Shown here: piece by piece, positions 9,599 through 32,481 of the stretch
How the letters are laid out: the number at the start of each line of letters is the position of its first letter
Position numbering within the stretch: position 1 is the first letter of the stretch
Assembly: GCA_950097015.1 (NCBI GenBank)
Contig: CATNEN010000039.1
Coordinates: 18,476,001 to 18,540,000, forward strand
Length of the DNA: 64,000 nt
DNA from: Macrostomum hystrix
Taxonomy: Eukaryota > Animalia > Platyhelminthes
Direction of reading: 5' to 3'
Position numbers and translations under genes: made by a program
Notes under the pieces: generated by a model
Told to the model about the DNA's origin: nothing
Seen by the model: the letters and a program-made list of their open reading frames with translations, nothing else
Databases searched by the model: none

Positions 9599-12520
9599 CA
9601 CCCGTGTTTACATTAGAACGGTAAAAAAGCACAGTTATAGACACGTTAAATACGACTATACAGCATGCTGTATGCATTCTCAGCATGCTCGATTTGCGCT
9701 AGTTAGTGTCGCACATTGTATGAACAAAACGTGGTAGTAATTATTGTTTTATATTCAATCTGTTAGCATTTTTATAGAAAATGAAATCACAAAATATTTG
9801 GATTTGGATCTTTATTCAGTAATATTTAATGCGTATATTTTTAATAATCATGATTTAAGTTTACTAAGCCTGGGTAGGCCGCGAGCTGCAGTATTATCAT
9901 ATATGCTTTTAATGCATAATATCAACCATAAAATAGAATAATACTTGTAGATAGACTACAAAGTAGATTTTTTTTGGCAATGACTGCAACCAGCAGATCT
10001 ATCATAGTTCTATAGGTCTATCGTACTTAAAATGAAATATTTGGTTGTTCCAGCTGTTGTTCAAAATGCTTAAATTGCCCCTGCTACTTAGTTTTTATCA
10101 ATATACTTTTTAGAATAGGCCTATGTTAGGCATTTTTTATTACAAACTAAATATAAAATTGCTAAGAACTAACTAGTAATAAATAAGTTGCCATATCGAC
10201 TATACCATATATGCCTGGCCTGGTTAGGCCTATAGCTTACTTATAGCTATCACCTATATAGAACAAATTTGTATTAGCTAGCCAAAAGTAGAAGAGTAGA
10301 GCATAACAGTTTGCCATTTATTAATTCAAATCTTCCTTAAAATGATATAAAATCATTCCATTAGACCTCTATCAGCCTATGAAATTAAAGATTCCATAAC
10401 AGTCATTAATCAACAGCAACAACTAATTAATCAGGTTTCCATGACCATGACCTGATTCTATAGCCCTCCTTGACCTAATATTGTAACCTTCCCTATCCTC
10501 ATTATAGCCTTCCTTCGCACTGATCCTATAGCCTTCTATTGGCTGATGCTATTTCTTTGGCTAGCTTTTATTTAATTAATTATATAGTGCTCTATACTCT
10601 GATCTTTCAATGTGCCTTGACATGATCACTCACCTTTCTACTAGCCATGCTTCTCTACTAACTGCTCCCCCACCCCCGCTTCTCTAACCATTGATCCCCA
10701 ACACCTGCTCATCTACTCACTGCTCCTCTACTGGCCCTGCTCCTCTATCGCAGCTCCTCTACCCCTGTTTCTCTACCCCTACTTCTCTACCCACTGCTCC
10801 TCTACTGGCCCTGCTCATCTACCCCTACTTCTCTGCCCCTGCTTCTCTACCCATTGATCCTCAACACCTGCTCATCTACTCACTGCTTCTCTACTGGCCC
10901 TGCTCCTCTACCCCTGCTCCTCTACCCCTGCTTCTCTACCCCTGCTTCTCTACCCCTGCTTTTCTGCCCCTGCTTCTCTACCCACTGCTCCTCTATTGGC
11001 CCTGCTCCTCTACTCACTGCTCCTCTACTCACTGCTCCTCTACTCACTGCTCATCTACTGGCCCTGTCCTCTACTGGCCCAGCTCCTCTACCCCTGCTCT
11101 TCTACCCCTGCTTCGCTACTCACTGCTCCTCTACCCCTGCTCCTCTACTCACTGCTCCTCTACTCACTGCTTCTCTACTCACTGCTCCTCTACCCCTGCT
11201 CCTCTACTCACTGCTCCTCTACTCACTGCTCCTCTACTCACTGCTCCTCTACTCACTGCTTCTCTACTCACTGCTCCTCTACCCCTGCTCCTCTACTCAC
11301 TGCTCCTCTACTCACTGCTTCTCTACTCACTGCTCCTCTACTCACTGCTTCTCTACTCACTGCTCCTCTACCCCTGCTCCTCTACTCACTGCTCCTCTAC
11401 TCACTGCTTCTCTACTCACTGCTTCTCTACTCACTGCTCCTCTACCCCTGCTCCTCTACCCCTGCTCCTCTACTCACTGCTCCTCTACTCACTGCTTCTC
11501 TACTCACTGCTTCTCTACTCACTGCTCCTCTACTCACTGCTTCTCTACTCACTGCTCCTCTACCCCTGCTCCTCTACTCACTGCTCCTCTACCCCTGCTC
11601 CTCTACTCACTGCTCCTCTACTCACTGCTTCTCTACTCACTGCTTCTCTACTCACTGCTCCTCTACTCACTGCTCCTCTACCCCTGCTCCTCTACTCACT
11701 GCTCCTCTACCCCTGCTCCTCTACTCACTGCTCCTCTACTCACTGCTTCTCTACTCACTGCTTCTCTACTCACTGCTCCTCTACTCACTGCTCCTCTACC
11801 CCTGCTCCTCTACTCACTGCTCCTCTACTCACTGCTTCTCTACTCACTGCTCCTCTACCCCTGCTCCTCTACTCACTGCTTCTCTACTCACTGCTCCTCT
11901 ACTGGCCCAGCCTTTCTTACCCTGATCCTGTAGCTCACCTCACCCTAATCCTCACCCTGATCCTGTAGCCTTCCTCACCCTGATCCTGTAGCCTTCCTCA
12001 CCCTGATCCTGTAGCCTTCCTTACCCTGATCCTGTAGCCTTCCTCACCCTGATCCTGTAGCCTTTCTCACCCTGATCCTGTAGCCTTCCTCACCCTGATC
12101 CTGTAGCCTTCCTCACCCTGATCCTGTAGCCTTCCTCACCCTGATCCTGTAGCCTTTCTCACCCTGATCCTGTAGCCTTCCTCACCCTGATCCTGTAGCC
12201 TTCCTCACCCTGATCCTGTAGCCTTCCTCACCCTGATCCTGTAGCCTTCCTTACCTGATCCTGTAGCCTTCCTTACCCTGATCCTGTATCCTTCCTTACC
12301 CTGATCCTGCATCCTTCCTTACTCTGATCATTTAGCTTACCCTAATCATTACCCTGATCCTGTACTCCTCGTCACCCGGATCCTCACCCTGATCCTCACT
12401 TTAATCTTTACCCTGATCCTCGCAATAATCCTCACCGATCCTCACTTTTATCCTCACCGATCCTCACCCTAATCCTCACCCTGATCCTCAACCTGATCCC
12501 GTGACCTTTCTCACCCTGAT
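9599..12520 (+). repeat. Left terminal inverted repeat (~2.9 kb): ~1.1 kb unique AT-rich sequence plus 15-bp, 23-bp and 12-bp arrays
   Basis: Reverse complement of 28220-32481. The identical 65-aa spurious ORFs at 9744-9941(+) and 32139-32336(-) both start 145 bp from their terminus. Confidence 0.95.
10690..11905 (+). repeat. 15-bp minisatellite (CTCTACTCACTGCTC and variants) in the left TIR
   Basis: Direct inspection; it produces low-complexity ORFs in all three frames. Confidence 0.95.
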
Positions 12521-12735
12521 CCTCGCCCTAATCCTCACCCTGATCCTCAACCTAATCCTACAGCCCTCCTTACCCTGATCCTCACCCTAATCCTACAGCC
12601 CTCCTCACCCTGATCCTGAACCCTAATCCTCACCCTGATTCTCAACCCTCATCCTCACCCTGATCCTGTTGCTCACCTCACCCTGATCCTGTAGCTCACC
12701 TCACCCTAATCCTCACCCTGATCCTGTTGCTCACC
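11920..12735 (+). repeat. 23-bp (CCCTGATCCTGTAGCCTTCCTCA) then 12-bp (CCCTGATCCTCA/CCCTAATCCTCA) arrays
   Basis: Direct inspection. Confidence 0.9.
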
Positions 12736-12749
12736 TGGGAGATCCTGGG

Positions 12750-13060
12750 AGAATCGAGGTAAATGAGGGATCAGTGGGAGTATTGAGGTAAATGAGGGAG
12801 CAGTGGGAGAATTGAGGTAAATGAGGGATCAGTGGGAGAATTGAGGTAAATGAGGGATCAGTGGGAGTATTGAGGTAAATGAGGGATCAGTGGGAGAATT
12901 GAGGTAAATGAGGGAGCAGTGGGAGAATTGAGGTAAATGAGGGATCAGTGGGAGAATTGAGGTAAATGAGGGATCAGTGGGAGAATTTAGGTAAATGAGG
13001 GATCAGTGGGAGTATTGAGGTAAATGAGGGATCAGTGGGAGAATTGAGGTAAATGAGGGA
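12750..13060 (-). repeat. 29-bp minisatellite, inverted relative to the 13533-16935 array
   Basis: GAGGTAAATGAGGGATCAGTGGGAG(A/T)ATT units, the reverse complement of the large array. Confidence 0.9.
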
Positions 13061-13400
13061 TGAGCCGTAAATAAATTTTAAATAAGCATAAATGGGTCGT
13101 AAATAATCAAGATGTATGGGAGAATTGTTATTAATGAGGGACAAGTGTCTTTCGGGCAAATAATTGAGCAACTTATCGGTTTCTCAAATGTCTTGAATTA
13201 TCATTTTTTATCTTTAGCCTAATGAAAAGTTGTGGTTATCACTTATGACTGTCTATTTATTCTACTAGGATTCTACTAGGTAAGGATCATAGTAAGTGAG
13301 GAATACAGGGGTTGAGGAGCAAGGCCAGTAGAGGAGCAGGGGTTTTTATTGGATTGCCAATGTTTTGTCAAACGATATTCTCATTTACTCTTTAGCTACC

Positions 13401-16400
13401 ATGATGAAGCGGTCTGCTTGGCACAGTTTCGTTTCCGATGAACTTAAATCTAGTGGAAATTTCAAAGGTGGTTGTATATAATCATGCGAATTTGTTATTT
13501 TGCCTTATTAACCTGCTCGTTTAATCTATTAAACCTCAATACTCCCACTGATCCCTCATTTACCTCAATACTCCCACTGATCCCTCATATACCTCAATAC
13601 TCCCACTGCTCCCTCATTTACCTCAATACTCCCACTGCTCCCTCATTTACCTCAATTCTCCCACTGATCCCTCATATACCTCAATACTCCCACTGATCCC
13701 TCATTTACCTCAATACTCCCACTGATCCCTCATATACCTCAATACTCCCACTGCTCCCTCATTTACCTCAATACTCCCACTGCTCCCTCATTTACCTCAA
13801 TTCTCCCACTGATCCCTCATATACCTCAATACTCCCACTGATCCCTCATATACCTCAATACTCCCACTGCTCCCTCATTTACCTCAATACTCCCACTGAT
13901 CCCTCATTTACCTCAATACTCCCACTGATCCCTCATATACCTCAATACTCCCACTGATCCCTCATTTACCTCAATACTCCCACTGCTCCCTCATTTACCT
14001 CAATACTCCCACTGCTCCCTCATTTACCTCAATTCTCCCACTGATCCCTCATATACCTCAATACTCCCACTGATCCCTCATTTACCTCAATACTCCCACT
14101 GATCCCTCATTTACCTCAATTCTCCCACTGATCCCTCATATACCTCAATACTCCCACTGATCCCTCATTTACCTCAATACTCCCACTGATCCCTCATATA
14201 CCTCAATTCTCCCACTGATCCCTCATATACCTCAATACTCCCACTGATCCCTCATATACCTCAATTCTCCCACTGATCCCTCATATACCTCAATACTCCC
14301 ACTGATCCCTCATATACCTCAATTCTCCCACTGATCCCTCATTTACCTCAATACTCCCACTGATCCCTCATATACCTCAATTCTCCCACTGATCCCTCAT
14401 ATACCTCAATTCTCCCACTGATCCCTCATTTACCTCAATACTCCCACTGATCCCTCATTTACCTCAATACTCCCACTGATCCCTCATATACCTCAATACT
14501 CCCACTGATCCCTCATTTACCTCAATTCTCCCACTGATCCCTCATTTACCTCAATACTCCCACTGATCCCTCATATACCTCAATACTCCCACTGCTCCCT
14601 CATTTACCTCAATACTCCCACTGATCCCTCATTTACCTCAATACTCCCACTGCTCCCTCATTTACCTCAATACTCCCACTGATCCCTCATTTACCTCAAT
14701 TCTCCCACTGATCCCTCATTTACCTCAATACTCCCACTGATCCCTCATTTACCTCAATTCTCCCACTGATCCCTCATTTACCTCAATACTCCCACTGATC
14801 CCTCATATACCTCAATACTCCCACTGATCCCTCATTTACCTCAATTCTCCCACTGCTCCCTCATTTACCTCAATACTCCCACTGATCCCTCATATACCTC
14901 AATACTCCCACTGATCCCTCATTTACCTCAATTCTCCCACTGATCCCTCATTTACCTCAATACTCCCACTGATCCCTCATATACCTCAATACTCCCACTG
15001 ATCCCTCATTTACCTCAATACTCCCACTGATCCCTCATTTACCTCAATTCTCCCACTGCTCCCTCATTTACCTCAATACTCCCACTGATCCCTCATTTAC
15101 CTCAATTCTCCCACTGATCCCTCATTTACCTCAATACTCCCACTGATCCCTCATTTACCTCAATTCTCCCACTGATCCCTCATTTACCTCAATACTCCCA
15201 CTGATCCCTCATATACCTCAATACTCCCACTGATCCCTCATTTACCTCAATTCTCCCACTGCTCCCTCATTTACCTCAATACTCCCACTGATCCCTCATT
15301 TACCTCAATACTCCCACTGATCCCTCATATACCTCAATTCTCCCACTGCTCCCTCATTTACCTCAATTCTCCCACTGATCCCTCATATACCTCAATACTC
15401 CCACTGATCCCTCATTTACCTCAATACTCCCACTGCTCCCTCATTTACCTCAATACTCCCACTGATCCCTCATATACCTCAATACTCCCACTGCTCCCTC
15501 ATTTACCTCAATACTCCCACTGATCCCTCATATACCTCAATTCTCCCACTGCTCCCTCATTTACCTCAATACTCCCACTGATCCCTCATATACCTCAATA
15601 CTCCCACTGATCCCTCATATACCTCAATTCTCCCACTGCTCCCTCATTTACCTCAATACTCCCACTGATCCCTCATATACCTCAATTCTCCCACTGATCC
15701 CTCATATACCTCAATTCTCCCACTGATCCCTCATTTACCTCAATACTCCCACTGATCCCTCATTTACCTCAATACTCCCACTGATCCCTCATATACCTCA
15801 ATACTCCCACTGATCCCTCATTTACCTCAATTCTCCCACTGATCCCTCATTTACCTCAATACTCCCACTGATCCCTCATATACCTCAATACTCCCACTGA
15901 TCCCTCATTTACCTCAATACTCCCACTGATCCCTCATTTACCTCAATTCTCCCACTGCTCCCTCATATACCTCAATACTCCCACTGATCCCTCATTTACC
16001 TCAATACTCCCACTGATCCCTCATTTACCTCAATACTCCCACTGCTCCCTCATTTACCTCAATTCTCCCACTGATCCCTCATATACCTCAATACTCCCAC
16101 TGATCCCTCATATACCTCAATACTCCCACTGATCCCTCATTTACCTCAATTCTCCCACTGATCCCTCATATACCTCAATACTCCCACTGATCCCTCATTT
16201 ACCTCAATACTCCCACTGATCCCTCATATACCTCAATTCTCCCACTGATCCCTCATATACCTCAATACTCCCACTGATCCCTCATATACCTCAATTCTCC
16301 CACTGATCCCTCATATACCTCAATACTCCCACTGATCCCTCATATACCTCAATTCTCCCACTGCTCCCTCATTTACCTCAATTCTCCCACTGATCCCTCA

Positions 16401-19400
16401 TATACCTCAATACTCCCACTGATCCCTCATTTACCTCAATACTCCCACTGATCCCTCATTTACCTCAATACTCCCACTGATCCCTCATATACCTCAATTC
16501 TCCCACTGCTCCCTCATTTACCTCAATTCTCCCACTGATCCCTCATATACCTCAATACTCCCACTGATCCCTCATTTACCTCAATACTCCCACTGCTCCC
16601 TCATTTACCTCAATACTCCCACTGATCCCTCATATACCTCAATACTCCCACTGCTCCCTCATTTACCTCAATACTCCCACTGATCCCTCATATACCTCAA
16701 TTCTCCCACTGCTCCCTCATTTACCTCAATACTCCCACTGATCCCTCATATACCTCAATTCTCCCACTGCTCCCTCATTTACCTCAATACTCCCACTGAT
16801 CCCTCATATACCTCAATACTCCCACTGATCCCTCATATACCTCAATTCTCCCACTGCTCCCTCATATACCTCAATTCTCCCACTGCTCCCTCATTTACCT
16901 CAATACTCCCACTGATCCCTCATTTACCTCAATACGTTAGATAAAAATAAAAAGAAATTTTATCAAACTGAATATTTTTCACATTCATTTTTAGGAGACA
17001 TGCCTTCTACAGCAGAAAGGTACAAAGCGCTGACAACCGATGAGAAGAATGCCATGAAAAGGAGCCTTACTGATGAAGAAGTTTTTCAAAGAGCTTTCAA
17101 GAGCTTTAAGAAAAAAGTAATATTTACTTGCCTGTATCATTTATGTTCATGAGAGTGTAATAGGAAAGCCTTTCAACCACTACAGTCTTTGGCAACCCAT
17201 CATTAATATTGTCACCTTGCTATGTTTACAGGTTGTCCTGATTCGCCAATTCTCAAATTACTTTATCCACATTTCTACAGTAGTAGTTTTACGTTAAGTT
17301 TTGTACGCTTGAACCTTTCAATCATTTAATGATTCACTTGCTTAACTTTGGAGTTAATATGCCTAAAGTTTTTAAACGTAAATGCACGAATTTGAGTGAG
17401 CTTAATTATTGAAATATATTTGTTTGAATATAACGAGAATAGCGAAAAAATTACTGAGTTTGGAATCTGGATCTTTAAAAAGGCTTTGCCCCTGTTAATT
17501 ATACGAGTATCCCTTATATATCCCTTATGACCCCATTTGAAAATTGTAGATAACCGAGCTCGAAAAGTGCGGCGCTCATGTCTGTGCCGTTGTGTGCTTC
17601 AACGGAGAAGTGTCTTCTGTTGAAACTCCGGAAGTAGTCGGAGTTGCTGCAAAATCTCGAATAGCAAATGTAATTTACTTTGCACTTTTGCTTATGATAC
17701 TTATTTAGTTAAAGTATTAATTGTATTTGACGGTATCGCTAAAATCAGACATATTTTTTACATATATGATTTTTATTGTTAATAGATACAACTGGCTTTC
17801 GATTAAAATTTCATTGATTGTTACTACTTTAGATGATTACATCTGGAGTGTCTCAGGTCACTCGGAGCGGAAACCTTTCCGTTGCACAGTTGCGAGTTCG
17901 AGTTGCTCACGTGCTAAATGAGAGATATCGTAAGGACCTCATATCATTTTTAATTATATTTTTTACCGGTTACAAGTTAAACCGTCGAAACGTGCCAAGT
18001 TCCTTTAATATTTAATGTAAAATCAAGTACTTTTACTATAGCAAAAACTGGTTTACTCCGTCCCGACTCTTGTTGTATTGATTCAGCTGCTGAAATGCAC
18101 GGTAATGGGTGTACACCGCTCTTAATTAGGTATTAGGTTTCTGCTAATATTGAGCTATGTGTACTAATTGTGCTCGTAGGTAGTCACTTCCTAGGGATAT
18201 AAAGTTACACACGTTATATGCGTTGCCATTTGATTTATACCGCAGTAATTAATTATTGTTTTCTTTGAATGTAATATAAAAATAATATTTGCAGGAAGGC
18301 TGTGGGCAAACTAGGCACATCATTTGGTGACACTAGACCCGCAGCCAGCGAGGTGGCAATTCTGCCTATTTCGCTGACTCCTGAGCACTCACGCACACAG
18401 ATACCGTACGCCTCACAGCCCCCAAACCTCTCCACGACTGCGCCTCAAATTAATGTGGCCTCGCTGAGGAATCGAGCTCAGGGACCGTGGTGCGAGAGGC
18501 AAACGCGTTAGACCGCTCTGCCCCTATGAATGTAGCTAGCATACGAAATGTTTACAATTTTTTGTTACTGTACTTGCTTAATTTTCCCATTGCTGAATTT
18601 CATTTTTGTTTTAAGGTCAAGGCCGAGGAGTGGGCAAGTACTGCATCGACGAGGAAGTTTCAGGCCAGTGGCTGAATTGGCCAGTCGACGTTCCCAGAGA
18701 CCGAACTGTAAGCTGCATGAAAAAGGACGCTCTACTTTGCCTCTGGGAAAAACGTCACGAATTAAAGTTTATTTCCTTGCCGGGGGCTCCGCGGCAAACG
18801 AAAAAATGCGCCCTAGTCTCTGAGTCTGAAAGTTCTGGCACTGTTGGTGCCTGGGTCTCTCATGGCTCTGCCTCAGGCTTTGCAACAGCTGCTGACTCTG
18901 ACACTGCAGCCCGCTCTGACACTGCCGCCCGCTCTGACACTGCCGCCCGCTCTGACACTGCCGCCCGCTCTGACACTGCCGCCCGCTCTGACACTGCGGC
19001 CCGCTCTGACACTGCCGCCCGCTCTGACACTGCGGCCCGCTCTGACACTGCCGCCCGCTCTGACACTGCGGCCCGCTCTGACACTGCCGCCCGCTCTGAC
19101 ACTGCCGCCCGCTCTGACACTGCCGCCCGCTCTGACACTGCCGCCCGCTCTGACACTGCCGCCCGCTCTGACACTGCCGCCCGCTCTGACACTGCGGCCC
19201 GCTCTGACACTGCCGCCCGCTCTGACACTGCGGCCCGCTCTGACACTGCCGCCCGCTCTGACACTGCCGCCCGCTCTGACACTGCCGCGTGCTCTCGTGC
19301 TTGTGTGATTTTTTTATCTTCTGGTCCTAGGAGTGCTGTAGTATCGTCGAAGTTTGTTGATGGGGACAGTTCGAGAATTTTAGGTAGAAGCATTTTACGC

Positions 19401-19460
19401 ACAGTCGTGACTAATAATGAACAGAAGAAGTATCGGGTTGTTTTAGGCAAACCATATTGA
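13401..19460 (+). CDS. Transposon accessory gene with an HMG-box-like N-terminus (exons 13401-13467, 16995-17116, 17550-17669, 17833-17929, 18616-19460; ~416 aa)
   Basis: All four introns are GT-AG and phase-compatible; exon total 1251 nt with no internal stop. Spliced start MMKRSAWHSFVSDELKSSGNFKGDMPSTAERYKALTTDEKNAMK resembles an HMG box. Later LRVRVAHVLNERY...WLNWPVDVP...LLCLWEKRHELKF, then (SDTAAR)n. Confidence 0.7.
13533..16935 (+). repeat. 3.4-kb 29-bp minisatellite (CCTCAATACTCCCACTGATCCCTCATTTA) filling intron 1 of the accessory gene
   Basis: Direct inspection; variation is limited to about three dimorphic positions. Confidence 0.95.
18415..18517 (-). mobile_element. tRNA-derived SINE fragment (copy 1)
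   Basis: Minus strand reads AGCGGTCTAACGCG...GAGCTCGATTCC TCAGCGAGGCCA (A-box remnant, B-box-like motif, tRNA-like 3' end). Clearly homologous to 58725-58831. Confidence 0.6.
18896..19288 (+). repeat. 18-bp coding minisatellite (TCTGACACTGCCGCCCGC, about 22 copies, encoding SDTAAR)
   Basis: Direct inspection; in frame within the last exon of the accessory gene. Confidence 0.95.
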
Positions 19461-19789
19461 AAAATATTTTATACTTTTGTTTAGGCCCCTAAACCCCATT
19501 TGTCTAGGATGATTCACCTTTGCTTAAGTCCACCTTTTTCTGCCCCCTTCAGAGAATTCTAGTTGCACCACTGTTCAGTCTGGCTGCTTTATAATATAAA
19601 TTTCATTTTTTACAGTTAAAATATATTAATGTTATGAATATAATTGTAGACCTAATGCTATTTAGCTATAAAATATTGTTTAAAATTTAACTAGGCTTAT
19701 AGTCAAGAAGTTGAGTTTTGACCTGAAATTTTTGTTTTATTTTTTTTAAAGCCTTCTAATTTTCAGGACTGTTATTTTGAATACGAGCT

Positions 19790-21170
19790 AGTTTGCTGGC
19801 TCGACTACAGGTTTCAGGGACTGCTCAAAAGTGTGAGCACTTTGCTGTTGATAGATTGAGCTGCGGGCCGGTGGCGCTGTGGGCCTGTTGAGGTCATAGG
19901 CACCAGCATCCTCGAGGCCGAGGGCAGCAACAGCAGTGGATGGTTGTGCTGATGGTGGTGCTGTTGGTACGTATGCCATTGCGGTGATCCATCGGTAGCG
20001 TGGCGGGGTCCACAGAGCAGAAAAGGGCACCAATGCTCCGTTCGAGCTTGTTCGCCTGTGCTGCTGGGACAAGGCGTTGCCGAGGTGAGCCGCATCGACG
20101 TCGCAGCGTCGGGTCTTACACTGGGCCCTCGGTTTTGCGGGCGTTCAGTTCGAGGCAGACTCTGGCATCTCGACTGACCGAGTCAAAGGCTTTGCGAAAG
20201 TCGATAAACACGATGGTCACCGACTTCTGCCGCGTTACGCAGGACTCGATGATGCTGCGGACGGTAGCGATTTGCTCGACGGTAGATCTGCCAGCGCGGA
20301 ATCCGCTCTGAGCGCCCAGCAGAAGCGGATTGATGACTGGCAGCAGTCTGTTCCCACGGACTACTCAACTCACGGACTATCTACTAGTGGTCCTTGTCTG
20401 TTCCTTGTGCAGTTTTGGGAGGGTACACTCCAGAGCGATGCCCTCTGGTTGTCCAAGCTGGTGGACAGGCCCTTCTTCGGAATTGAGCCAATCTTGGAGG
20501 TGCGCCAGGTGAAGGGAGCCTCGGCGCGGGATCGCCTCCAAGAATGGAATATTTGTTGAGGAATGTGGTGATGATCGAATTGAGCTCTGGGAGCCTGAGG
20601 ACCCTGGGAGGGACCCCATCGACACCAGGCGCAGCATCAGGCTTTATGCTTTGCTGAGTGTTGTTGCGAACCTCGTATAGGGGGTGATGGACCGATGTTG
20701 AAATTCTCGCTGCGAGCATGGGAAATTTACACTGCCGAGATGGGAGTTAAGATCAAACTTCACTACTTACGAAAGTTTTATAGTACGCCCCCACACAAAA
20801 ATACTCAGCAAAATTGTACGAGTATGGCTAGGGTGTAACACAAAAGAATGGCAACATCGTTTATTCGACAGCAACCTTCGATTCACATGGACAGTTAATT
20901 CAGAAAAGTTCTTATAGTAACGACTGTGCTCCGCGAGCCGCAGCAACAGCGAGAGGCCGAAATTCTTCGTGGCATCCCCACCAGGTGCCGCAATAAACCT
21001 TGAGGAAAACTTGCCAGGCATCGGAAATGGCTTGGCGCATGTAACACACTAAACGTGTGGGTCGAACCTCGCGCTGGCAGACCGAGACCGGTTTCTGGCT
21101 TGTTTGCATTCGTCAGTCGGCCATAGCCACACGCAGGACACCACCACTCTTTGTGTGCACAGAAGTCTCT
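19790..21170 (-). mobile_element. Degenerate non-LTR retrotransposon (RTE-like) RT fragment nested in the KDZ element; recognisable core ~20130-20720
   Basis: Minus-strand peptides AAPGVDGVPPRVL, GIALECTLPKL and QSGFRAGRSTVEQIATVRSIIE...FIDFRKAFDSV run directly into LELNARKTE, so the QG and YADD region is deleted. Frameshifted. Outer boundaries are approximate. Confidence 0.75.
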
Positions 21171-21784: not shown

Positions 21785-22590
21785 ATTATTATTATTATTA
21801 TTAAAACGCGCACGCCATCTATGGGTGCTGATTTTTTTTTATATTTATTTTTTAACAACACATTTAAATGAACAACGAAAAGCAACATAAAAAGCGAAGT
21901 TAAGTAGGAATCAAATATCGAGCTGGGAAGGGAAAGCAAAGGTATTAAAAATAAGAGCAGTAAAAACACAAGGGACGCCAGGGATAAAACAAAATATGAA
22001 ATATCTATTGTTGAATGCTAGTAAGATCTCGTAGTCTCAGGGCAGCTGTTCCCTTATTTTAGAGATTTCTATGATGTATTTTGCAAAAGCTTCAGCGGTT
22101 TCCCTATCGTCTTGAGCCATTATGTAGTTAGATTTTTCTTCTGCTGTTAAGGATATGAAATTGGGGGTTTTCCCAGAAACTTCCGTCTCAAATTTCGAAC
22201 GTGCTGCGCTATACATATTCCAAGTGCACTTAAAAAGGAAGTGGACCTCGTTTTCAACTTCTGTTTTGCACTTACTACATAATCTATTTACATACGGAAT
22301 TTTCGGTCTCGCAGTTCGCAATGTTTCGCAAGCTAGCTTATGGTTTCCTAGTCTAAACGAGGCTATGGTACGTCTCAACTCCGGGTTGTATATTTGTTGT
22401 AAATATTTTTCGGCTGAATAATATTGCTTGAAGGAGTAATAGAAGTGACTTAGCTTGCTTGAGTTCTGTGTCCTTTGTCTCCAATGGGTATCGAACTGAG
22501 AAACGAAATTTTTCCTGTGGTTTCCAATTGCTTTTGCAGGACTAATGCCTCTGCAGTTCAGCATAACGTCATTGTTGGTCTTTGCTTTGT
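21785..22590 (-). mobile_element. 5'-truncated LINE 3' end (ORF2 C-terminus with CCHC-type motif, 3' UTR, (TAA)n tail)
   Basis: SKLSHFYYSFK...EKYL...RRTIASFRLGNHKLACE...RLCSKC...VENEVHFLFKC..Y; (TAT)n tract at 21785-21802. Confidence 0.8.
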
Positions 22591-23933: not shown

Positions 23934-26900
23934 TCAAGGAGCCACTGGCGAAGCAGCGTCGCTGGTTGGTGGCAGTACGGAAGCGTCGAGCTGCTGTTCC
24001 GGAAAAATCTGCGCGTTTTTTCGCAGCAAATAGATAAGGCCATCGTACCTTGCCGAGAGAATGGCGACCATCGGTTGACCTGATGCCTCGTCTATCTGTC
24101 TGCTTGTCTGGGACAGTGAATAAGACAGAAAATGAGTGACTCGTCTGGCCTCAGCGCTGACTAGCATCGACTCTTCTGCTACGCGTTGACGAAGATGCCA
24201 AAGGCGAACCGCCTCCATCCGTGGTGCATACTCAACAGGATTTAGTGCAGCGAAGCCAGCCGAGTTAGGATGGCTGAAATCTTCGAAGCGCAGCTTTCGC
24301 ACAGTGGGAACCTGTGAACATGTGTACAGAAAACCTATGAAATATGAAGTGCATGCTATGGATGCTAGACGCCTTATTGTGATTCACCAAATTTGATTAC
24401 AGTCAGCTCTATAAAATAATCATGCATGAAATGATAGTCATCAAGCGCTTGAAAACAGATAGCAGTTAAACAGTTACACGACAGATAGAATATCAACTCA
24501 AAACTTCTTCACCTTGGCATTGTAGCTCCTTATGATCCGATTTGACTTTCGAATGCTAACTGATGTAACTATGCGGAGTCGCTTAGCGAGCTTTTGGCCT
24601 CTCTCAGTGACGGAGTGTCTGATGAGAAACTCTCGTTCGCAAGCCAATTGATGCAGACGCGAGATTACTTTAACCTTGCTAGAGCGTTGAATGCTTTGCT
24701 CGCTGTTCGATGTGACACGCAATTCTGCATCCCACTGTTCAGCTAGAGCATCGAAGCTTGTGGTATCTGGATGCATGAAAGGAGAAAAAAGAAGGCGACC
24801 ATAAAACACTTTATGAAGGATGGATACACCCCCAGGACCTTTTGCTCTGTGGCCCACTCGTTCCAAAATCGTGAATGTCTCAATGCTAATGTGCTCAAGC
24901 GATGTAAAACTCGCGCAAAGCGGTAACCTTTGCTCGAACCAAAGCTGTAACGAATTAGCTCACTAAATAGAAAATAATTTAACAAACCTGCATAGCCATG
25001 TTTCTTCAGGAAATCGACAATATCCTTCTCTACAATAACAGTCATCCTGTGATGCATTACAAGGCGTTTCTTCAGCCACGTTGCTGCGAAAAGAACAATT
25101 CAGTAAAGTAAGATTAAATTTCACCTAAAATAATCGTACTTGTCTGGAGTCAGAAGCAGCTTTCAGAAGCATGTACAGTTTAATTAGTTCAAACCGAAAT
25201 CCTAATTCTAGCTTTAATTTATTGTGGCGGATAATAAAAGCAACTCTCGCTTACAGATTTCAAGTAGCTTCTGGAAGTTTATTGAGTTGGCCATGTGAGA
25301 CAAAAACTGTCGACGGTTGTAATGTGTCATCTCTTTGACCTGTGGTCCATACCGCCGGATTATTGACCACAGAGATTCGCATGATTCTCCGTCCGTCAGA
25401 CCAGCGCCGTTGGTATAGCGTATGCCCTGCTTTATTTGGCACTGGTATACATGGCCGTAGGCATGAAAAGCTGGCACGGCAAACTTCATTCGATCTACGG
25501 CGAAATGACCCTGAAGCTTACATGCCACATCGTATGACACGATTAGAGGAACCGGCGATGGGACATCTTCAAGAGCTTGAGCCACCATAGTGCATGCATA
25601 GTTCAGCCTGTAATTGTTCACATAGAAGACGAAACATTAGTAGTACCCCATGAGGTATCAGTATTAGTCAAGTTATTTGGGCCAATACTCAGAACATTTT
25701 TTCGGCAAACTTATCTTCTGGATTTCATCAAACTTCACAATTCACAAATGAGTGATCTTGAAACCAGAACACTATTAAATTCGTTAATTTTTCATCTAAC
25801 CTATCCTAAAAACCCTGCACATACAAGCACTTATGGCTTTAAAATTGCATAAACTGAAATTAAATAGCAACTGAAATACTTCTCTCCTGGCGTCGTCATG
25901 TCAGCGAGGTATCGAATGCAGCCGTGGCGGCACGAACCACAGAAACAACCGAAGACGTCGAGACGCTGGATGTCCGACGAAGAACTGAGCGCCTGGCCTC
26001 GACCACCAGCAGTCCAGTTGGAGCAGTGTTCTTCTTTGGGCTCAGTTTTTTTCTGAAAATCAACATCTAAAAAGATGTCCGTTTTTGGAGCCGAAGAAAG
26101 GTCATCGCCCCCTGCGGTTTTTCGATGACGAATTCCAAAGCAACCGTCAAGTAAAAGAAAGCACGGTTGACTTTCATTGCAATCAGGCTGCTACAAAGGG
26201 TTTATTTAAAACAGTAAATAAGGAATGTGTAAGGCAACTGTTCAACCGTTCTAATGGCATAACAAGGAAATGCAATGTCATATATAAAATGAAATCCGAT
26301 TATATAAACCATTTGGTAGCACATACAACATAGCATGCAGGGCAGTCCACCTTTGCTGACCAACGTATGTCATCGACAAAGTGCTCAAACGCTCTGAATG
26401 CACCGAATGTGTTCAGATGTCGGTAAAGGTTGACCTGAAAAGAATTGCACTTTTTAATCAATAAACCCTTTGGAATGGAAATTCGACTTCCGGAAAGTAA
26501 TTGAGACTTATTTTATTTTCGAGACTAGATCCTAGCTACTTTACTTACAGGCCCGAAATTCCACATAGGAGTTTTATGTAGCTCGAGTGCTTTACATATT
26601 GAGAACAAAGACGCGCTAGTGCACTGTCTTAGCGACTCCATAAGGAACAGAAGACGAATTGAAACAGCCTTAGGCACGTGGGCGCGCTCAGGGACTGCTT
26701 GCAATGGCCAGTAGCCGAGGTGCAACATAGCCTGAGAGGTGGTTGTGCATCTGCACATATGAAGCTTGACGTTCAATTCTTCAGCTGCAAATGAGTCACA
26801 TGAAATGGTAGATTTAAACTCTGATACCGTAGAAGAAAGGGTGGCTTTTTTCTTGATTATATTCTTAGGAGGCTGTCTAAATAAGTTACACAACTTTCTC

Positions 26901-27952
26901 TTTATTTACGCGCTAGCATTTTGCAGCGACCTAAAACATTAATGTCGAGGCTTTAACCTCGACATTATTGGGGAATTAAGGAATGTAATTCAGAATTACT
27001 GCACTGGTTTTACAAGTTAAATTTTTACAGCCAATGCAATCGCCTAAAAACACAAATAGTGCTCTTGAGAAAAAACTTGACAGTCGTAATTAAAAATATA
27101 GGTTTCAAAGCAAAACAACAAGTAAACCAATAGGATTGTTTATTACACCTCGATGGCTCGATCTTACCATCTTCAGTGAAGAATACAGCATCGATCAAGT
27201 ATGTTCCATCGTGCTCCTCTTGATCTCCAAACGAACACTCGATGTGACACGTCAGAGTGTCAGACGTACGTTTAAAATATTTTCCCTATAAATAAAATAT
27301 AACATTTCATCGTTTGAGTATAGAATTATTTGATACTCGTATATACTTATAGCTTTTCTATACAGTTATTTAACTCTTATAAACCTACATTCCATTGCTC
27401 CACTACATGTAGAGGATTATGCCTGTGCTGGTAGTTCATGCAACTTGTGCAAACCTCTCTTAGGCCACACATGTTGCATCGGAGGGAGCTCTCCATCTCA
27501 TTGCACAGTTGGCAGACACCTCGCCGATGATGAATTTTGCTGTAGGAGTTGTACAAATTGCGACGATTATCTCGCCACGCTTTTGAAAATTCTTCTGAAG
27601 CCTTAGCGTAGCGGGACTTGCGTGGTGCATTTTGATCCTCTTGCATGCATTGGGGATTCGGATCAGAACTATTGGATGACGCACTAGTGGGCGCAGTCTG
27701 ATCTACGTCAATCCAGTCATCATCCTGAATCCTGTAAAATACAGGCAGGGGTACGTATTTAATAGAAGTAACAACTTCCTTGATTATTAATGTCTGGAAA
27801 ATGTCCATTCGAAAAATAAATTCGTATTCAACTTACTCATTCGAAATCCTAATCCTCTTTCTGGATTGCTCGTACGATACTTTAACTGTTCTGCAACGCC
27901 TTCCAGCAACATGTTGCTTAATTGTATTTGAAATTTTTGACGTTCGTGGCAT
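23934..27952 (-). CDS. CxC2-KDZ transposase, 10 exons (27952-27837, 27731-27389, 27285-27168, 26784-26549, 26434-26327, 26190-25880, 25607-25255, 25083-24988, 24766-24513, 24311-23934), ~770 aa
   Basis: Exon total 2313 nt, all junctions GT-AG and in phase. Motifs: CxxC...CxxC...CxxC...H...PLHVVEQWNGKYF and CRC...LGYWP (CxC2-like), CPAC, LLDGCF, DVFGCFCGSCRHG, PGEKLNY, YDVAC, FHAYGHVYQC, GAGLTDGESCESLWS, GQKLAKRL...IRSYN, RVAEE. The exon 4 acceptor has an in-frame alternative at 26820. Confidence 0.88.
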
Positions 27953-28219
27953 CTGAAAAGGTAGCTGGAAAACTGGATTTGAAATTAGTGGCGTAAGACA
28001 ATTATTTGAGTAAACACGTGATAAGAAGAGACTGTTCAAATAGTTTTGTAAGACCTTGATTGTTGTGTTAATACGAAAGTGCCAGGAAGGCTGCAGCTCA
28101 GTGCCGAAACACTTTACTGCTGACAATTGTGTCAGCAGTTAGACCCCAAATACCCACTCCACGACGACTCGCTTTTAGCTGGCCAAACCCATATCAGTCT
28201 GCCTCGGCTGGCTACAGTT

Positions 28220-31200
28220 TTAGGGTGAGAAGGGTCACGGGATCAGGTTGAGGATCAGGTTGAGGATTAGGGTGAGGATTAGGGTGAGGATTAGGGTGAG
28301 GATTAGGGTGACGATCGGTGAGGATTAGGGTGAGGATCGGTGAGGATTAGGGTGAGAAGGGTCACGGGATCAGGTTGAGGATCAGGGTGAGGAAAGCTAC
28401 AGGACCAGGGTGAGAAAGGCTACAGGATCAGAGTGAGGAAGGATATAGGATCAGAGTGAGGAAGGCTACAGGATCAGGGTGAGGAAGGATATAGGATCAG
28501 AGTGAGGAAGGATACAGGATCAGGGTAAGGAAGGCTACAGGATCAGGGTGAGAAAGGCTACAGGATCAGGGTGAGGAAGGCTACAGGATCAAGGTGAGGA
28601 AGGCTACAGGATCAGGGTAAGGAAGGCTACAGGATCAGGGTGAGGAAGGCTACAGGATCAGGGTGAGGAAGGCTACAGGATCAGGGTGAGGAAGGCTACA
28701 GGATCAGGGTAAGGAAGGCTACAGGATCAGGGTGAGGAAGGCTACAGGATCAAGGTGAGGAAGGCTACAGGATCAGGGTGGGGAAGGCTACAGGATCAAG
28801 GTGAGGAAGGCTACAGGATCAGGGTGGGGAAGGCTACAGGATCAGGGTGAGGAAGGCTACAGGATCAGGGTGAGGAAGGCTACAGGATCAGGATAAGAAA
28901 AGCTACAGGATCAGGGTGAGGAAGGCTACAGGATCAGGTAAGGAAGGCTACAGGATCAGGGTGAGGAAGGCTACAGGATCAGGGTAAGGAAGGCTACAGG
29001 ATCAGGGTGAGAAAGGCTACAGGATCAGGTAAGGAAGGCTACAGGATCAGGGTGAGGAAGTATACAGGATCAGGGTGGGGAAGGCTACAGGATCAAGGTG
29101 AGGAAGGCTACAGGATCAGGTAAGGAAGGCTACAGGATCAGGGTGAGGAAGGCTACAGGATCAGGGTGAGGAAGGCTACAGGATCAGGGTGAGGAAGGCT
29201 ACAGGATCTGGGTGAGGAAGGCTACAGGATCAGGGTGAGGAAGGCTACAGGATCAGGGTGAGGAAGGCTACAGGATCAATGTGAGGAAGGCTACAGGATC
29301 AGGTAAGGAAGGCTACAGGATCAGGTAAGGAAGGCTACAGGATCAGGGTGAGGAAGGCTACAGGATCAGGGTGAGAAAGGCTACAGGATCAGGGTGAGGA
29401 AGGCTACAGGATCAGGTAAGGAAGGCTACAGGATCAGGGTGAGGAAGGCTACAGGATCAGGGTGAGGAAGGCTACAGGATCAGGGTAAGGAAGGCTACAG
29501 GATCAGGGTGAGGAAGGCTACAGGATCAAGGTGAGGAAGGCTACAGGATCAGGGTGGGGAAGGCTACAGGATCAGGGTGAGGAAGGCTACAGGATCAGGG
29601 TGAGGAAGGCTACAGGATCAGGATAAGAAAAGCTACAGGATCAGGGTGAGGAAGGCTACAGGATCAGGTAAGGAAGGCTACAGGATCAGGGTGAGGAAGG
29701 CTACAGGATCAGGGTAAGGAAGGCTACAGGATCAGGGTGAGAAAGGCTACAGGATCAGGTAAGGAAGGCTACAGGATCAGGGTGAGGAAGTATACAGGAT
29801 CAGGGTGGGGAAGGCTACAGGATCAAGGTGAGGAAGGCTACAGGATCAGGTAAGGAAGGCTACAGGATCAGGGTGAGGAAGGCTACAGGATCAGGGTGAG
29901 GAAGGCTACAGGATCAGGGTGAGGAAGGCTACAGGATCAGGGTGAGGAAGGCTACAGGATCAGGGTGAGGAAGGCTACAGGATCAGGGTGAGGAAGGCTA
30001 CAGGATCAAGGTGAGGAAGGCTACAGGATCAGGTAAGGAAGGCTACAGGATCAGGTAAGGAAGGCTACAGGATAAGGGTGAGGAAGGCTACAGGATCAGG
30101 GTGAGAAAGGCTACAGGATCAGGGTGAGGAAGGCTACAGGATCAGGTAAGGAAGGCTACAGGATCAGGGTGAGGAAGGCTACAGGATCAGGGTGAGAAAG
30201 GCTACATGATCAGGGTGAGGAAGGCTACAGGATCAGGGTGAGAAAGGCTACAGGATCAGGGTGAGGAAGGCTACAGGATCAGGGTGAGGAAGGCTACAGG
30301 ATCAGGGTAAGAAAGGCTGGGCCAGTAGAGGAGCAGTGAGTAGAGGAGCAGTGAGTAGAGGAGCAGGGGTAGAGGAGCAGTGAGTAGAGAAGCAGTGAGT
30401 AGAGGAGCAGTGAGTAGAGAAGCAGTGAGTAGAGAAGCAGTGAGTAGAGGAGCAGTGAGTAGAGGAGCAGGGGTAGAGGAGCAGGGGTAGAGGAGCAGTG
30501 AGTAGAGAAGCAGTGAGTAGAGGAGCAGTGAGTAGAGGAGCAGGGGTAGAGGAGCAGTGAGTAGAGAAGCAGTGAGTAGAGGAGCAGTGAGTAGAGGAGC
30601 AGTGAGTAGAGGAGCAGTGAGTAGAGGAGCAGGGGTAGAGGAGCAGTGAGTAGAGAAGCAGTGAGTAGAGAAGCAGTGAGTAGAGGAGCAGTGAGTAGAG
30701 GAGCAGGGGTAGAGGAGCAGTGAGTAGAGAAGCAGTGAGTAGAGGAGCAGTGAGTAGAGAAGCAGTGAGTAGAGGAGCAGTGAGTAGAGGAGCAGGGGTA
30801 GAGGAGCAGTGAGTAGAGAAGCAGTGAGTAGAGGAGCAGTGAGTAGAGGAGCAGTGAGTAGAGGAGCAGTGAGTAGAGGAGCAGGGGTAGAGGAGCAGTG
30901 AGTAGAGAAGCAGTGAGTAGAGGAGCAGTGAGTAGAGGAGCAGGGGTAGAGGAGCAGTGAGTAGCGAAGCAGGGGTAGAAGAGCAGGGGTAGAGGAGCTG
31001 GGCCAGTAGAGGACAGGGCCAGTAGATGAGCAGTGAGTAGAGGAGCAGTGAGTAGAGGAGCAGTGAGTAGAGGAGCAGGGCCAATAGAGGAGCAGTGGGT
31101 AGAGAAGCAGGGGCAGAAAAGCAGGGGTAGAGAAGCAGGGGTAGAGAAGCAGGGGTAGAGGAGCAGGGGTAGAGGAGCAGGGCCAGTAGAGAAGCAGTGA

Positions 31201-32481
31201 GTAGATGAGCAGGTGTTGAGGATCAATGGGTAGAGAAGCAGGGGCAGAGAAGTAGGGGTAGATGAGCAGGGCCAGTAGAGGAGCAGTGGGTAGAGAAGTA
31301 GGGGTAGAGAAACAGGGGTAGAGGAGCTGCGATAGAGGAGCAGGGCCAGTAGAGGAGCAGTGAGTAGATGAGCAGGTGTTGGGGATCAATGGTTAGAGAA
31401 GCGGGGGTGGGGGAGCAGTTAGTAGAGAAGCATGGCTAGTAGAAAGGTGAGTGATCATGTCAAGGCACATTGAAAGATCAGAGTATAGAGCACTATATAA
31501 TTAATTAAATAAAAGCTAGCCAAAGAAATAGCATCAGCCAATAGAAGGCTATAGGATCAGTGCGAAGGAAGGCTATAATGAGGATAGGGAAGGTTACAAT
31601 ATTAGGTCAAGGAGGGCTATAGAATCAGGTCATGGTCATGGAAACCTGATTAATTAGTTGTTGCTGTTGATTAATGACTGTTATGGAATCTTTAATTTCA
31701 TAGGCTGATAGAGGTCTAATGGAATGATTTTATATCATTTTAAGGAAGATTTGAATTAATAAATGGCAAACTGTTATGCTCTACTCTTCTACTTTTGGCT
31801 AGCTAATACAAATTTGTTCTATATAGGTGATAGCTATAAGTAAGCTATAGGCCTAACCAGGCCAGGCATATATGGTATAGTCGATATGGCAACTTATTTA
31901 TTACTAGTTAGTTCTTAGCAATTTTATATTTAGTTTGTAATAAAAAATGCCTAACATAGGCCTATTCTAAAAAGTATATTGATAAAAACTAAGTAGCAGG
32001 GGCAATTTAAGCATTTTGAACAACAGCTGGAACAACCAAATATTTCATTTTAAGTACGATAGACCTATAGAACTATGATAGATCTGCTGGTTGCAGTCAT
32101 TGCCAAAAAAAATCTACTTTGTAGTCTATCTACAAGTATTATTCTATTTTATGGTTGATATTATGCATTAAAAGCATATATGATAATACTGCAGCTCGCG
32201 GCCTACCCAGGCTTAGTAAACTTAAATCATGATTATTAAAAATATACGCATTAAATATTACTGAATAAAGATCCAAATCCAAATATTTTGTGATTTCATT
32301 TTCTATAAAAATGCTAACAGATTGAATATAAAACAATAATTACTACCACGTTTTGTTCATACAATGTGCGACACTAACTAGCGCAAATCGAGCATGCTGA
32401 GAATGCATACAGCATGCTGTATAGTCGTATTTAACGTGTCTATAACTGTGCTTTTTTACCGTTCTAATGTAAACACGGGTG
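28220..32481 (-). repeat. Right terminal inverted repeat (~4.3 kb): 12-bp array, expanded 23-bp array (~28380-30315), 15-bp array (~30320-31390) and unique arm
   Basis: Reverse complement of the left TIR with different minisatellite copy numbers. Confidence 0.95.

What the first reader, a model, noticed from the sequence alone, without database searches (positions are those of the whole stretch)
9599..32481. Complete 22.9-kb two-gene KDZ-type transposon with 3-4 kb foldback arms and a 7-bp TSD
Seen: mirror-image termini (CACCCGTG...CACGGGTG), an exact CATTTTT duplication on both flanks, ~1.1-kb unique arms that look identical by eye, and two convergent spliced genes. Known: KDZ transposases (Kyakuja, Dileera, Zisupton) are described mainly from fungi and fish; Zisupton has short TIRs and 8-bp TSDs. 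Inference: kilobase minisatellite-built TIRs, a 7-bp TSD and an intron-rich CxC2-KDZ gene in an invertebrate may define an undescribed giant foldback-like family. The matching arms and clean TSD suggest a recent insertion.
Basis: partly seen in the sequence, partly recalled or inferred. Interest (0 to 1): 0.92.

Follow-up and report, generated by a model that had tools for sequence, protein, structure and literature searches.

The report
Single-copy flatworm KDZ foldback transposon
This is a real, complete 22.9-kb cut-and-paste jumping gene of the known KDZ class in a Macrostomum-type flatworm genome, with an apparently intact multi-exon transposase gene and unusually long mirror-image ends built of short tandem repeats; it is a well-preserved new variant of a known kind, not a new kind of element.

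Summary
Window 9599-32481 (22,883 bp) is bounded by CACCCGTG...CACGGGTG, flanked by an exact 7-bp duplication (CATTTTT), and has arms that are 1861/1861 nt complementary. Looser arm homology, built of minisatellites, runs 3.1 kb on the left and 4.2 kb on the right.

The minus strand carries a KDZ transposase gene (27952 to 23934) in at least nine open exon blocks. These are collinear with Macrostomum lignano KDZ proteins, and the D/D/E motifs are kept. The plus strand carries a conserved but unidentified partner gene.

This element is single-copy in its 220-Mb genome. A sister family (about 58% identical transposase) has five copies, all with CACCCGTGTT termini, the same arm layout and perfect 7-bp duplications. 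That rules out an assembly artefact.

Seven-bp duplications and CA..TG ends are already published for fungal Kyakuja (2025). What is new is the kilobase foldback arms and the conserved partner gene in an animal.

Identical arms do not prove a recent insertion: in the sister family, copy-private substitutions sit on both arms, so arms are homogenised. The interior also holds a nested retroelement fragment and older repeat fragments.

This scan has already reported similar KDZ elements elsewhere in this genome. No read data could be obtained.

The parts
9592..9598 (.). Left target-site duplication, CATTTTT
   Evidence: Read directly; identical to 32482-32488.
9599..32481 (.). Whole element, 22,883 bp, termini CACCCGTG...CACGGGTG
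   Evidence: The boundary is confirmed by an 83%-identical relic terminus elsewhere on the same contig, whose homology starts exactly at the first base.
9599..11459 (+). Left perfect arm: 1049-bp unique terminal segment (9599-10647) plus the first 812 bp of the 15-bp array
   Evidence: 1861 nt, 100% complementary to 30621-32481.
30621..32481 (-). Right perfect arm, the mirror of 9599-11459
10648..11903 (+). Left 15-bp minisatellite (TGCTCCTCTACTCAC, about 85 copies)
   Evidence: TRF. Its partner on the right is 30324-31432 (about 75 copies).
30324..31432 (-). Right 15-bp minisatellite
   Evidence: TRF.
11938..12725 (+). Left 23/12-bp minisatellite (TCCTCACCCTGATCCTGTAGCCT)
   Evidence: TRF; 343-nt inverted match at 93% to 29326-29668.
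28240..30318 (-). Right 23/12-bp minisatellite (about 85 copies; longer than the left one)
   Evidence: TRF.
12746..13061 (-). 316-bp patch of the 29-bp unit, in inverted orientation relative to the large array
   Evidence: TRF; inverted matches at 95-97% to 14.3-16.1 kb.
13533..16935 (+). 29-bp minisatellite, 117 copies, left side only; possibly lies in an intron of gene 2
Evidence: TRF.
13407..13448 (+). Candidate first-exon peptide of gene 2 (KRSAWHSFVSDELK)
   Evidence: Collinear 14-aa match to the sister family (KASAWNIFVSRRYK), E 0.37, not significant alone. No Pfam hit.
18615..19457 (+). Main exon block of gene 2: conserved WLxWPxxVPxD...LW..R...F.S.P block, an in-frame 18-bp repeat (18896-19288, (SDTAAR)n), then VVxTNN
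   Evidence: The layout and the open frame through the repeat are the same in the sister family, at L013:5020-5571:-. Weak paralogues of the block sit convergent, 7-8 kb from KDZ exons, at five other loci.
19484..19786 (.). Fragment 93% identical to one other locus
20163..20722 (.). Fragment of another repeated sequence (83-86% identity, about 8 loci); the ORF 20089-20556 belongs to it
21040..21284 (.). 245-bp dispersed repeat (84-85% identity, more than 30 loci)
21783..22589 (-). Nested 5'-truncated non-LTR retroelement fragment with a (TAA)n tail; young, high-copy family
   Evidence: 98-99% identical to at least 39 scored copies out of 4390 candidates. Other copies continue upstream with shared sequence and diverge after the tail.
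23934..27952 (-). KDZ transposase gene, at least 9 exon blocks. The blocks lie inside the open frames 27836-28138 (Met at 27952), 27380-27832 (B-box-like), 26528-26905 and 26303-26512 (CxC region), 25834-26190 (KDZ N half), 25217-25636 (KDZ C half), 24966-25124, 24501-24959 and 23937-24383 (C-terminus).
   Evidence: Pfam. Collinear tblastn and fragment alignment to M. lignano and other animal KDZ proteins. Motifs LLLDGCFG, VSYDVACK and GLTDGESCE are kept.
32482..32488 (.). Right target-site duplication, CATTTTT

Best explanation
A structurally complete, single-copy DNA transposon of the KDZ (Kyakuja-Dileera-Zisupton) class in a Macrostomum-type flatworm.

Shown:
- The element has defined ends (CACCCGTGTT...), a 7-bp target duplication and 1.86-kb perfect arms.
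- Arm homology continues as minisatellite arrays, to 3.1 kb on the left and 4.2 kb on the right.
- The multi-exon B-box/CxC/KDZ transposase gene has all homology blocks open and its acidic catalytic motifs kept.
- A convergent partner gene is linked to KDZ genes in several families of this genome.

Inferred:
- The KDZ DDE-type transposase recognises the conserved CACCCGTGTT ends, excises the element and reinserts it through cuts staggered by 7 bp, preferably in AT-rich DNA.
- The subterminal arrays act as multivalent binding sites for the transposase N-terminal zinc modules and/or the partner protein. The arrays differ in sequence but not in layout between families.
- The two arms are kept identical by arm-to-arm conversion, so their identity does not date the insertion.
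For: Ends, TSD and arms.

Transposase: KDZ Pfam hits at 3.5e-26 and 1e-9. Nine exon blocks are collinear with full-length M. lignano proteins (58% identical over the KDZ C-half, lower elsewhere), with no stop inside any block and D/D/E contexts conserved.

Sister family (five copies): all have CACCCGTGTTGACACGG termini and perfect 7-bp TSDs (GTTTAAT, TTTAAAC, AAAATTT, GCTATGC, AAATTTT). Each has a roughly 960-bp unique end followed by tandem arrays. Four of the five also have two matching arms; the 9.3-kb copy D does not. The complete copies A and E, the two compared, have two convergent genes.

Boundary: an independent relic terminus (83% identical) starts its homology at base 1.

Partner gene: its conserved block plus an in-frame coding repeat is shared by two families. 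The block is found convergent, 7-8 kb from KDZ exons, at five other loci.

Arm homogenisation: three copy-private substitutions are each present on both arms.

Phylogeny: the flatworm KDZ sequences form one supported clade (96/90).

Literature: Kyakuja makes 7-bp TSDs and has CA..TG ends (PMC12730594).
Against: - Expression, exact splice junctions, heterozygosity and current mobility are therefore untested.
- No second full copy exists in the genome, so activity of this particular family is not shown.
- The 3' part of gene 2 is undefined, and the 19.5-22.6 kb interval is a patchwork of other repeats. The partner gene of this copy could be damaged.
- The binding role of the arrays and of the partner protein is pure inference. 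The partner has no detectable domain.
Confidence: 0.85

Rival explanations
1. The ends are complete but this copy is functionally dead or non-autonomous. On this reading it is an old resident insertion whose arms look young only because they are homogenised, and whose partner gene or regulatory regions were damaged by the nested retroelement and other repeat fragments.
For: It is single-copy in a genome where the sister family has five copies that are 99.8-99.9% identical over the roughly 930-nt unique arm segments compared. The interior holds an 807-bp retroelement fragment and three older repeat fragments. Arm identity is uninformative about age. Only one exon block of gene 2 is recognisable.
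Against: All nine transposase blocks are open with catalytic motifs kept. The TSD is perfect. The nested fragments lie between the two genes, and no coding block is seen to be interrupted.
Confidence: 0.3
2. Assembly artefact: the perfect inverted arms were created by mis-joining or collapse of repeats.
For: 100% identity over 1861 nt and arrays of short repeats are typical trouble spots. No reads could be checked.
Against: Four of the five sister-family copies, at four other loci, show the same two-arm architecture, and all five have their own 7-bp TSD. The two flanks here carry the same 7 bp and are unique in the genome.
Confidence: 0.02
3. It is an ordinary member of Zisupton or Dileera, the KDZ branches whose complete elements have been described in fish, in Puccinia (rust fungi) and in Cryptococcus.
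For: It shares the Pfam KDZ domain. Animal KDZ genes are usually labelled Zisupton in repeat libraries (PMC9297572).
Against: Zisupton and Dileera make 8-bp TSDs (PMC12730594; 10.1101/2024.08.15.608186). Here 6 of 6 insertions have 7 bp. No SWIM or CxC4 domain was found.
Confidence: 0.07
4. It is a composite: two separate foldback-type non-autonomous elements that happen to flank an unrelated KDZ gene region.
For: The arms alone resemble foldback elements, and the interior contains foreign repeats.
Against: One matching 7-bp TSD spans the whole 22.9 kb. The termini occur nowhere else as solo pairs. The same ends-plus-genes package recurs in the sister family.
Confidence: 0.02

Closest known systems
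Kyakuja (KDZ class; fungal families such as Kyakuja-1_LB, Kojima 2025, PMC12730594)
   Same: KDZ transposase domain, 7-bp target-site duplications, 5'-CA..TG-3' termini, large multi-gene elements.
   Different: Fungal Kyakuja are reported without TIRs and often carry a TET/JBP gene. This element has 1.86-kb perfect arms, with 3-4 kb of structural arm homology built of minisatellites. It has a B-box-like N-terminus, many introns, no TET/JBP, and a different partner gene. Phylogenetic membership is unresolved.
Zisupton (fish and others; Boehne et al. 2012, as cited in PMC12730594 and PMC9297572)
   Same: Multi-exon KDZ transposase in animals; TIR-bounded cut-and-paste element.
   Different: Zisupton makes 8-bp TSDs. 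A Zisupton-type element of Cryptococcus has a CxC4 + SWIM architecture (10.1101/2024.08.15.608186). Here the TSD is 7 bp, the arms are kilobases long, and no SWIM or CxC4 was found.
Cryptococcus KDZ1-3 (Dileera clade; 10.1101/2024.08.15.608186)
   Same: 'Gigantic' KDZ elements (9-11 kb) with TIRs and extra ORFs of unknown function; experimentally mobile.
   Different: 8-bp TSD, 236-bp TIR, CxC1 domain, fungal host. The element here is twice as long, mostly because of arrays (about 9.4 kb, or 41%, is tandem repeat).
Foldback-type elements (Drosophila FB; Galileo of the P superfamily). This comparison is from my own knowledge and was not tested here.
   Same: Long inverted arms composed of tandem repeats with variable array length. 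Galileo also makes 7-bp TSDs.
   Different: The transposase here is KDZ, not P-like or MuDR-like. The resemblance is in architecture only.
CACTA/EnSpm (CMCT group)
   Same: 5'-CAC...GTG-3' ends, subterminal repeat arrays, and a two-gene arrangement of transposase plus DNA-binding accessory. The two-gene arrangement is from my own knowledge.
   Different: CACTA makes 3-bp TSDs and uses a different transposase family. No such domain was found here.

Membership tests
KDZ class (Pfam PF18758) | KDZ transposase domain above Pfam's gathering score | tested here: met
   Exon blocks 25217-25636(-) score 92.7 bits and 25834-26190(-) score 38.7 bits, against a cut-off of 26.6. Together they cover profile positions 3-217.
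KDZ class (Pfam PF18758) | Conserved acidic catalytic contexts and an N-terminal cysteine cluster (CxCn) | tested here: met
   LLLDGCFG, VSYDVACK and GLTDGESCE align with homologues. The cysteine-cluster region aligns with homologues, but the Pfam CxC1 hit is only 20.4 bits, below the cut-off.
Kyakuja | 7-bp target-site duplication | tested here: met
   CATTTTT here, and 5 of 5 sister-family copies have exact 7-bp TSDs. Criterion taken from PMC12730594.
Kyakuja | 5'-CA..TG-3' termini | tested here: met
   CACCCGTG...CACGGGTG.
Kyakuja | Placement of the transposase inside the Kyakuja clade | tested here: inconclusive
   The tree used 148 columns. Flatworm sequences form one clade (96/90), but deep nodes are open and no labelled Kyakuja, Dileera or Zisupton references were available.
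Kyakuja | Absence of TIRs (as reported for the fungal families) | tested here: not met
   1861-nt perfect TIRs. This may be a family trait of fungi rather than a defining feature.
Zisupton / Dileera | 8-bp target-site duplication | tested here: not met
   7 bp in 6 of 6 insertions. The eighth base differs on both sides.
Zisupton | CxC4 and SWIM domains next to KDZ | tested here: not met
   Neither was found in the exon blocks or in the closest full-length homologues.
Foldback / Galileo-type elements | Long arms of tandem repeats | tested here: met
Foldback / Galileo-type elements | P-like or MuDR-like transposase | tested here: not met
   The only transposase domain found is KDZ.
CACTA/EnSpm | 3-bp TSD and a CACTA-type transposase | tested here: not met
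   7-bp TSD; no such Pfam family among the ORFs scanned.

The most novel reading that the evidence does not exclude
Macrostomum KDZ elements may form an undescribed animal branch of the KDZ class. Its marks would be a conserved CACCCGTGTT terminus, 7-bp duplications, kilobase foldback arms that homogenise themselves, and an obligate convergent partner gene. On this reading the partner gene's fast-evolving protein reads the family-specific arm minisatellites, giving each family a private 'address code' that prevents cross-mobilisation.
Probability: 0.25. Interest if true: 0.6.

Novelty: new variant of a known kind. Interest (0 to 1): 0.45.

Why it matters
Complete KDZ transposons, with ends, duplications and accessory genes defined, have so far been described mainly in fungi and one fish lineage. 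In animals, KDZ genes are mostly known only as 'uncharacterized proteins'. This locus and its sister family give a full anatomy for an animal KDZ lineage.

They tie that lineage to the 7-bp / CA..TG pattern just reported for fungal Kyakuja. They also show two features worth testing:
- Arms that evolve in concert within a copy.
- A conserved partner gene whose sequence changes while the layout is kept.

Macrostomum lignano is transgenic-tractable, so a native large-cargo cut-and-paste system there could also be of practical interest. As a single finding it is moderate: the class is known, and this scan has already met it repeatedly in this genome.

Tried and rejected
There is therefore no read support, no empty-allele test, no expression data and no splice junctions.
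- Empty site in the assembly: both flanks are unique apart from a 150-bp dispersed repeat at 9100-9250 and a short repeat at about 32.86 kb. No paralogous empty site or alternative haplotig exists.
- Other copies: only self-hits, plus four copies of one 273-bp relic terminus that share the same outer flank, which indicates a segmental duplication. A TSD table for this exact family was therefore impossible, and I used the sister family instead.
- Identity of gene 2: nothing was found.
  - Pfam at E up to 10 on exon pieces gave nothing.
  - A PDB profile search found only a designed repeat protein at E 1.6.
  - The ESM Atlas gave no usable hit.
  - Single-sequence AlphaFold2 gave pLDDT 42, which is unusable, so no fold search was run.
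  - The homologue search found none.
  - The GTF2I-like and HMG-like readings in earlier notes could not be reproduced on this copy.
- Further gene-2 exons: low-threshold tblastx against the sister family found nothing significant beyond the one block.
- A closer protein or transcript of this element in the public collection: none; the best is M. lignano at 58%.
- Joined spliced model: the exon blocks were searched one by one by reference.
Full report
**1. Observation**

The element runs from window 9599 to 32481 (22,883 bp). Its left end reads CATTTTT|CACCCGTGTTTACATTAGAACGG, and its right end is the exact reverse complement followed by CATTTTT. The eighth base outside and inside differs on both sides, so the duplication is exactly 7 bp.

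The repeat finder gives arms 9599-11459 and 30621-32481 that are 1861 nt long and 100% complementary. Tandem Repeats Finder shows that each arm has three parts:
- a 1049-bp unique terminal segment;
- a 15-bp minisatellite, 1256 bp on the left and 1109 bp on the right;
- a 23/12-bp minisatellite, about 790 bp on the left and about 2080 bp on the right.

The perfect match stops inside the 15-bp array, where copy numbers differ. Structural arm homology is thus about 3.1 kb on the left and 4.2 kb on the right.

The left side also has a 316-bp patch of a 29-bp unit (12746-13061). It lies inverted relative to a 3.4-kb array of the same unit (13533-16935). About 41% of the element is tandem repeat.

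**2. Genes**

Stop-to-stop frames were scanned piece by piece. PF18758 (KDZ) is hit on the minus strand at 25834-26190 (profile positions 3-101) and 25217-25636 (profile positions 100-217; 92.7 bits). There are weak CxC1-like (26528-26905) and B-box-like (27380-27832) matches upstream.

A HMMER scan of 1.84 billion representatives with the 140-aa exon found 1556 relatives. The best are Macrostomum lignano proteins (58% identical); next come a jellyfish, fish, echinoderms, molluscs, amphioxus, a nemertean and fungi. The animal relatives have the architecture B-box + CxC1/2 + KDZ.

Mapping five full-length flatworm proteins back on the window, and adding the window's open frames as fragments to their alignment, gives nine collinear blocks from a Met at 27952 to a stop after 23937. 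No block is interrupted. The contexts LLLDGCFG, VSYDVACK and GLTDGESCE, and the AFHAYGH motif, are conserved. A small block at 25084-24968 fills the only gap.

I did not build or search a joined spliced model. Exon blocks were treated one by one by reference, so exact junctions remain to be shown by RNA.

On the plus strand, the frame 18615-19457 encodes three things in order:
- a block (..GKYC..WLNWPVDVPRD...LCLWEKRHELKFISLP);
- an in-frame 18-bp repeat, (SDTAAR)n;
- then ..VVTNN...

The sister family (section 3) has the same order: block, in-frame (AGQSI)n repeat, VVGTNN. An open frame kept through arrays whose period is a multiple of three, in two families that share only 38% identity, argues for a real coding exon.

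Weak paralogues of the block (29-38% identity) lie convergent, 7-8 kb from KDZ exons, at five other loci. The two-gene, tail-to-tail arrangement is therefore a lineage trait.

What the protein is remains unknown; every sequence and structure route failed. A possible first exon before the 29-bp array (13407-13448) matches the sister family collinearly, but not significantly.

**3. Copies, and a sister family**

The genome has 220 Mb in 42 contigs, and the window is C39:18,476,001-18,540,000. In it the termini, the interior and the KDZ exon occur only here.

Four further hits to the terminus are 83% identical over only the first 273 bp and share one outer flank. They are one relic copied by a segmental duplication. 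Usefully, its homology begins at the very first base of the element.

The KDZ exon has 62 paralogous hits at 60% identity or less. I fetched five copies of the closest family. All begin CACCCGTGTTGACACGG, end with its reverse complement, and are flanked by perfect 7-bp duplications:

| Copy | TSD | Length |
|---|---|---|
| A | GTTTAAT | 16.6 kb |
| B | TTTAAAC | 21.1 kb |
| C | AAAATTT | 19.4 kb |
| D | GCTATGC | 9.3 kb |
| E | AAATTTT | 18.1 kb |

Each has a unique end of about 960 bp followed by kilobases of tandem arrays. The complete copies A and E, which were compared with this element, carry the two convergent genes. Copy D is a rearranged 9.3-kb derivative whose right arm matches only at the terminus.

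Across the two families, 7-bp duplications were therefore found in six of six insertions. The first ten bases of the terminus are shared although the transposases are only about 58% identical. The unit sequences of the arrays differ completely while the layout is kept. Four of the five sister copies repeat the two-arm architecture at other loci, which also disposes of the assembly-artefact rival.

**4. Age**

The sister copies are 99.8-99.9% identical in the roughly 930-nt unique arm segments compared, which points to a very recent burst. Three copy-private substitutions (alignment positions 243 in B, 326 in C, 472 in E) are each present on both arms of that copy. Only the right arm of E has changes of its own.

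A new mutation arises on one arm. Finding it on both arms means the arms are converted to each other, or one is copied from the other. Hence the 1861/1861 identity here does not show a recent insertion.

Other clues point both ways. The TSD is perfect and all transposase blocks are open. But the interval 19.5-22.6 kb between the genes holds foreign DNA:
- a 303-bp fragment (93% identical to one other locus);
- a 560-bp fragment of a repeated sequence (83-86%);
- a 245-bp dispersed repeat (84-85%, more than 30 loci);
- an 807-bp 5'-truncated non-LTR retroelement with a (TAA)n tail, from a very abundant young family (98-99%).

None is seen to cut a recognised coding block.

**5. Mechanism**

Shown:
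- defined ends;
- a staggered-cut signature of 7 bp;
- an intact-looking DDE-type KDZ gene;
- a conserved partner gene;
- arms in concert.

Inferred:
- cut-and-paste transposition by the KDZ enzyme acting on the CACCCGTGTT ends;
- AT-rich target preference (five of six TSDs are at least 71% A+T);
- arrays as family-specific binding platforms for the zinc modules of the transposase and/or the partner protein, by analogy with subterminal repeats of CACTA and foldback elements (my own knowledge);
- arm homogenisation by intramolecular conversion or repair.

**6. Comparison with what is known**

Kojima 2025 (PMC12730594) reports that fungal Kyakuja make 7-bp TSDs and have CA..TG ends without TIRs, whereas Zisupton and Dileera make 8 bp. 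Cryptococcus KDZ1 (Dileera clade) is 10.9 kb with 236-bp TIRs and 8-bp TSDs. Animal KDZ genes are known as multi-exon 'Zisupton-like' genes (PMC9297572). No held paper mentions both Macrostomum and KDZ.

The present element therefore matches Kyakuja in TSD and termini. It differs in its kilobase arms, its B-box-like N-terminus and its partner gene.

A tree of the C-half of the domain (148 columns) places this element, the sister family and the M. lignano proteins in one supported clade (96/90), with the sister family next to M. lignano P0001. Deeper nodes are unresolved and no labelled references were at hand. Membership in Kyakuja is thus plausible but not shown.

**7. Earlier notes of this scan**

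Several other windows of this genome were already reported as two-gene KDZ elements with 7-bp TSDs and judged examples of a known class. Two notes concern this same stretch: a 10-exon KDZ gene at 23934-27952, and a proposed HMG-like gene split by the 29-bp array. My mapping agrees with the first. The second, and the GTF2I-like reading of the partner gene, could not be confirmed here.

**8. Limits**

- Repbase and Dfam were not available.

**9. Verdict**

This is a real, complete, apparently intact KDZ transposon. It is a new variant of a known kind, of moderate interest.

Noticed in passing
window 21783-22589 (minus strand): An 807-bp 5'-truncated copy of a very abundant, young non-LTR retroelement (4390 candidate hits; 98-99% identity) with a (TAA)n tail. 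Its last 190 codons are open but have no Pfam match.
   Followed up: partly
window 21040-21284 and 20163-20722: Inside the transposon there is a 245-bp dispersed repeat (more than 30 loci, 84-85%) and a 560-bp fragment of another repeated sequence with an open frame (about 8 loci at 83-86% DNA identity; up to 75% amino-acid identity).
   Followed up: partly
G000:C39:15,723,696-16,145,136 (L003-L007): Four copies of a 273-bp relic of a related terminus (CAACCGTGTTTACATTATAACGG, 83%) share one outer flank. Three are about 30-36 kb apart and one is inverted, which indicates a segmental duplication carrying an old transposon end.
   Followed up: partly
sister-family copies L011-L030 (C1, C8, C41): Copy-private substitutions are present on both arms of the same copy, which indicates arm-to-arm homogenisation. 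Copy D (9.3 kb) is a rearranged derivative with an inverted internal segment, yet has a perfect 7-bp TSD. Length differences among copies come mainly from array length.
   Followed up: yes
window 9100-9250: A 150-bp dispersed repeat just upstream of the insertion site, with at least 40 copies at 84-97% identity.
   Followed up: no
window 35,560-49,630: A chain of at least nine different minisatellite arrays (periods 15-52 bp; up to 2 kb; strong GC skew) without long inverted repeats. This may be debris of other array-bearing elements, or a general trait of this genome.
   Followed up: no
window 62,244-62,846: A 16-bp tandem array (AGAGATGAGACACGGG). Variants of its reverse complement match the transposon's terminal decamer with one mismatch (CACCCGTGTC, 3 times). 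This is probably coincidence.
   Followed up: no
window 18896-19288 and L013:5020-5571: The partner gene carries an in-frame hexapeptide-coding tandem repeat whose sequence differs between families ((SDTAAR)n against (AGQSI)n) but whose position is conserved.
   Followed up: partly
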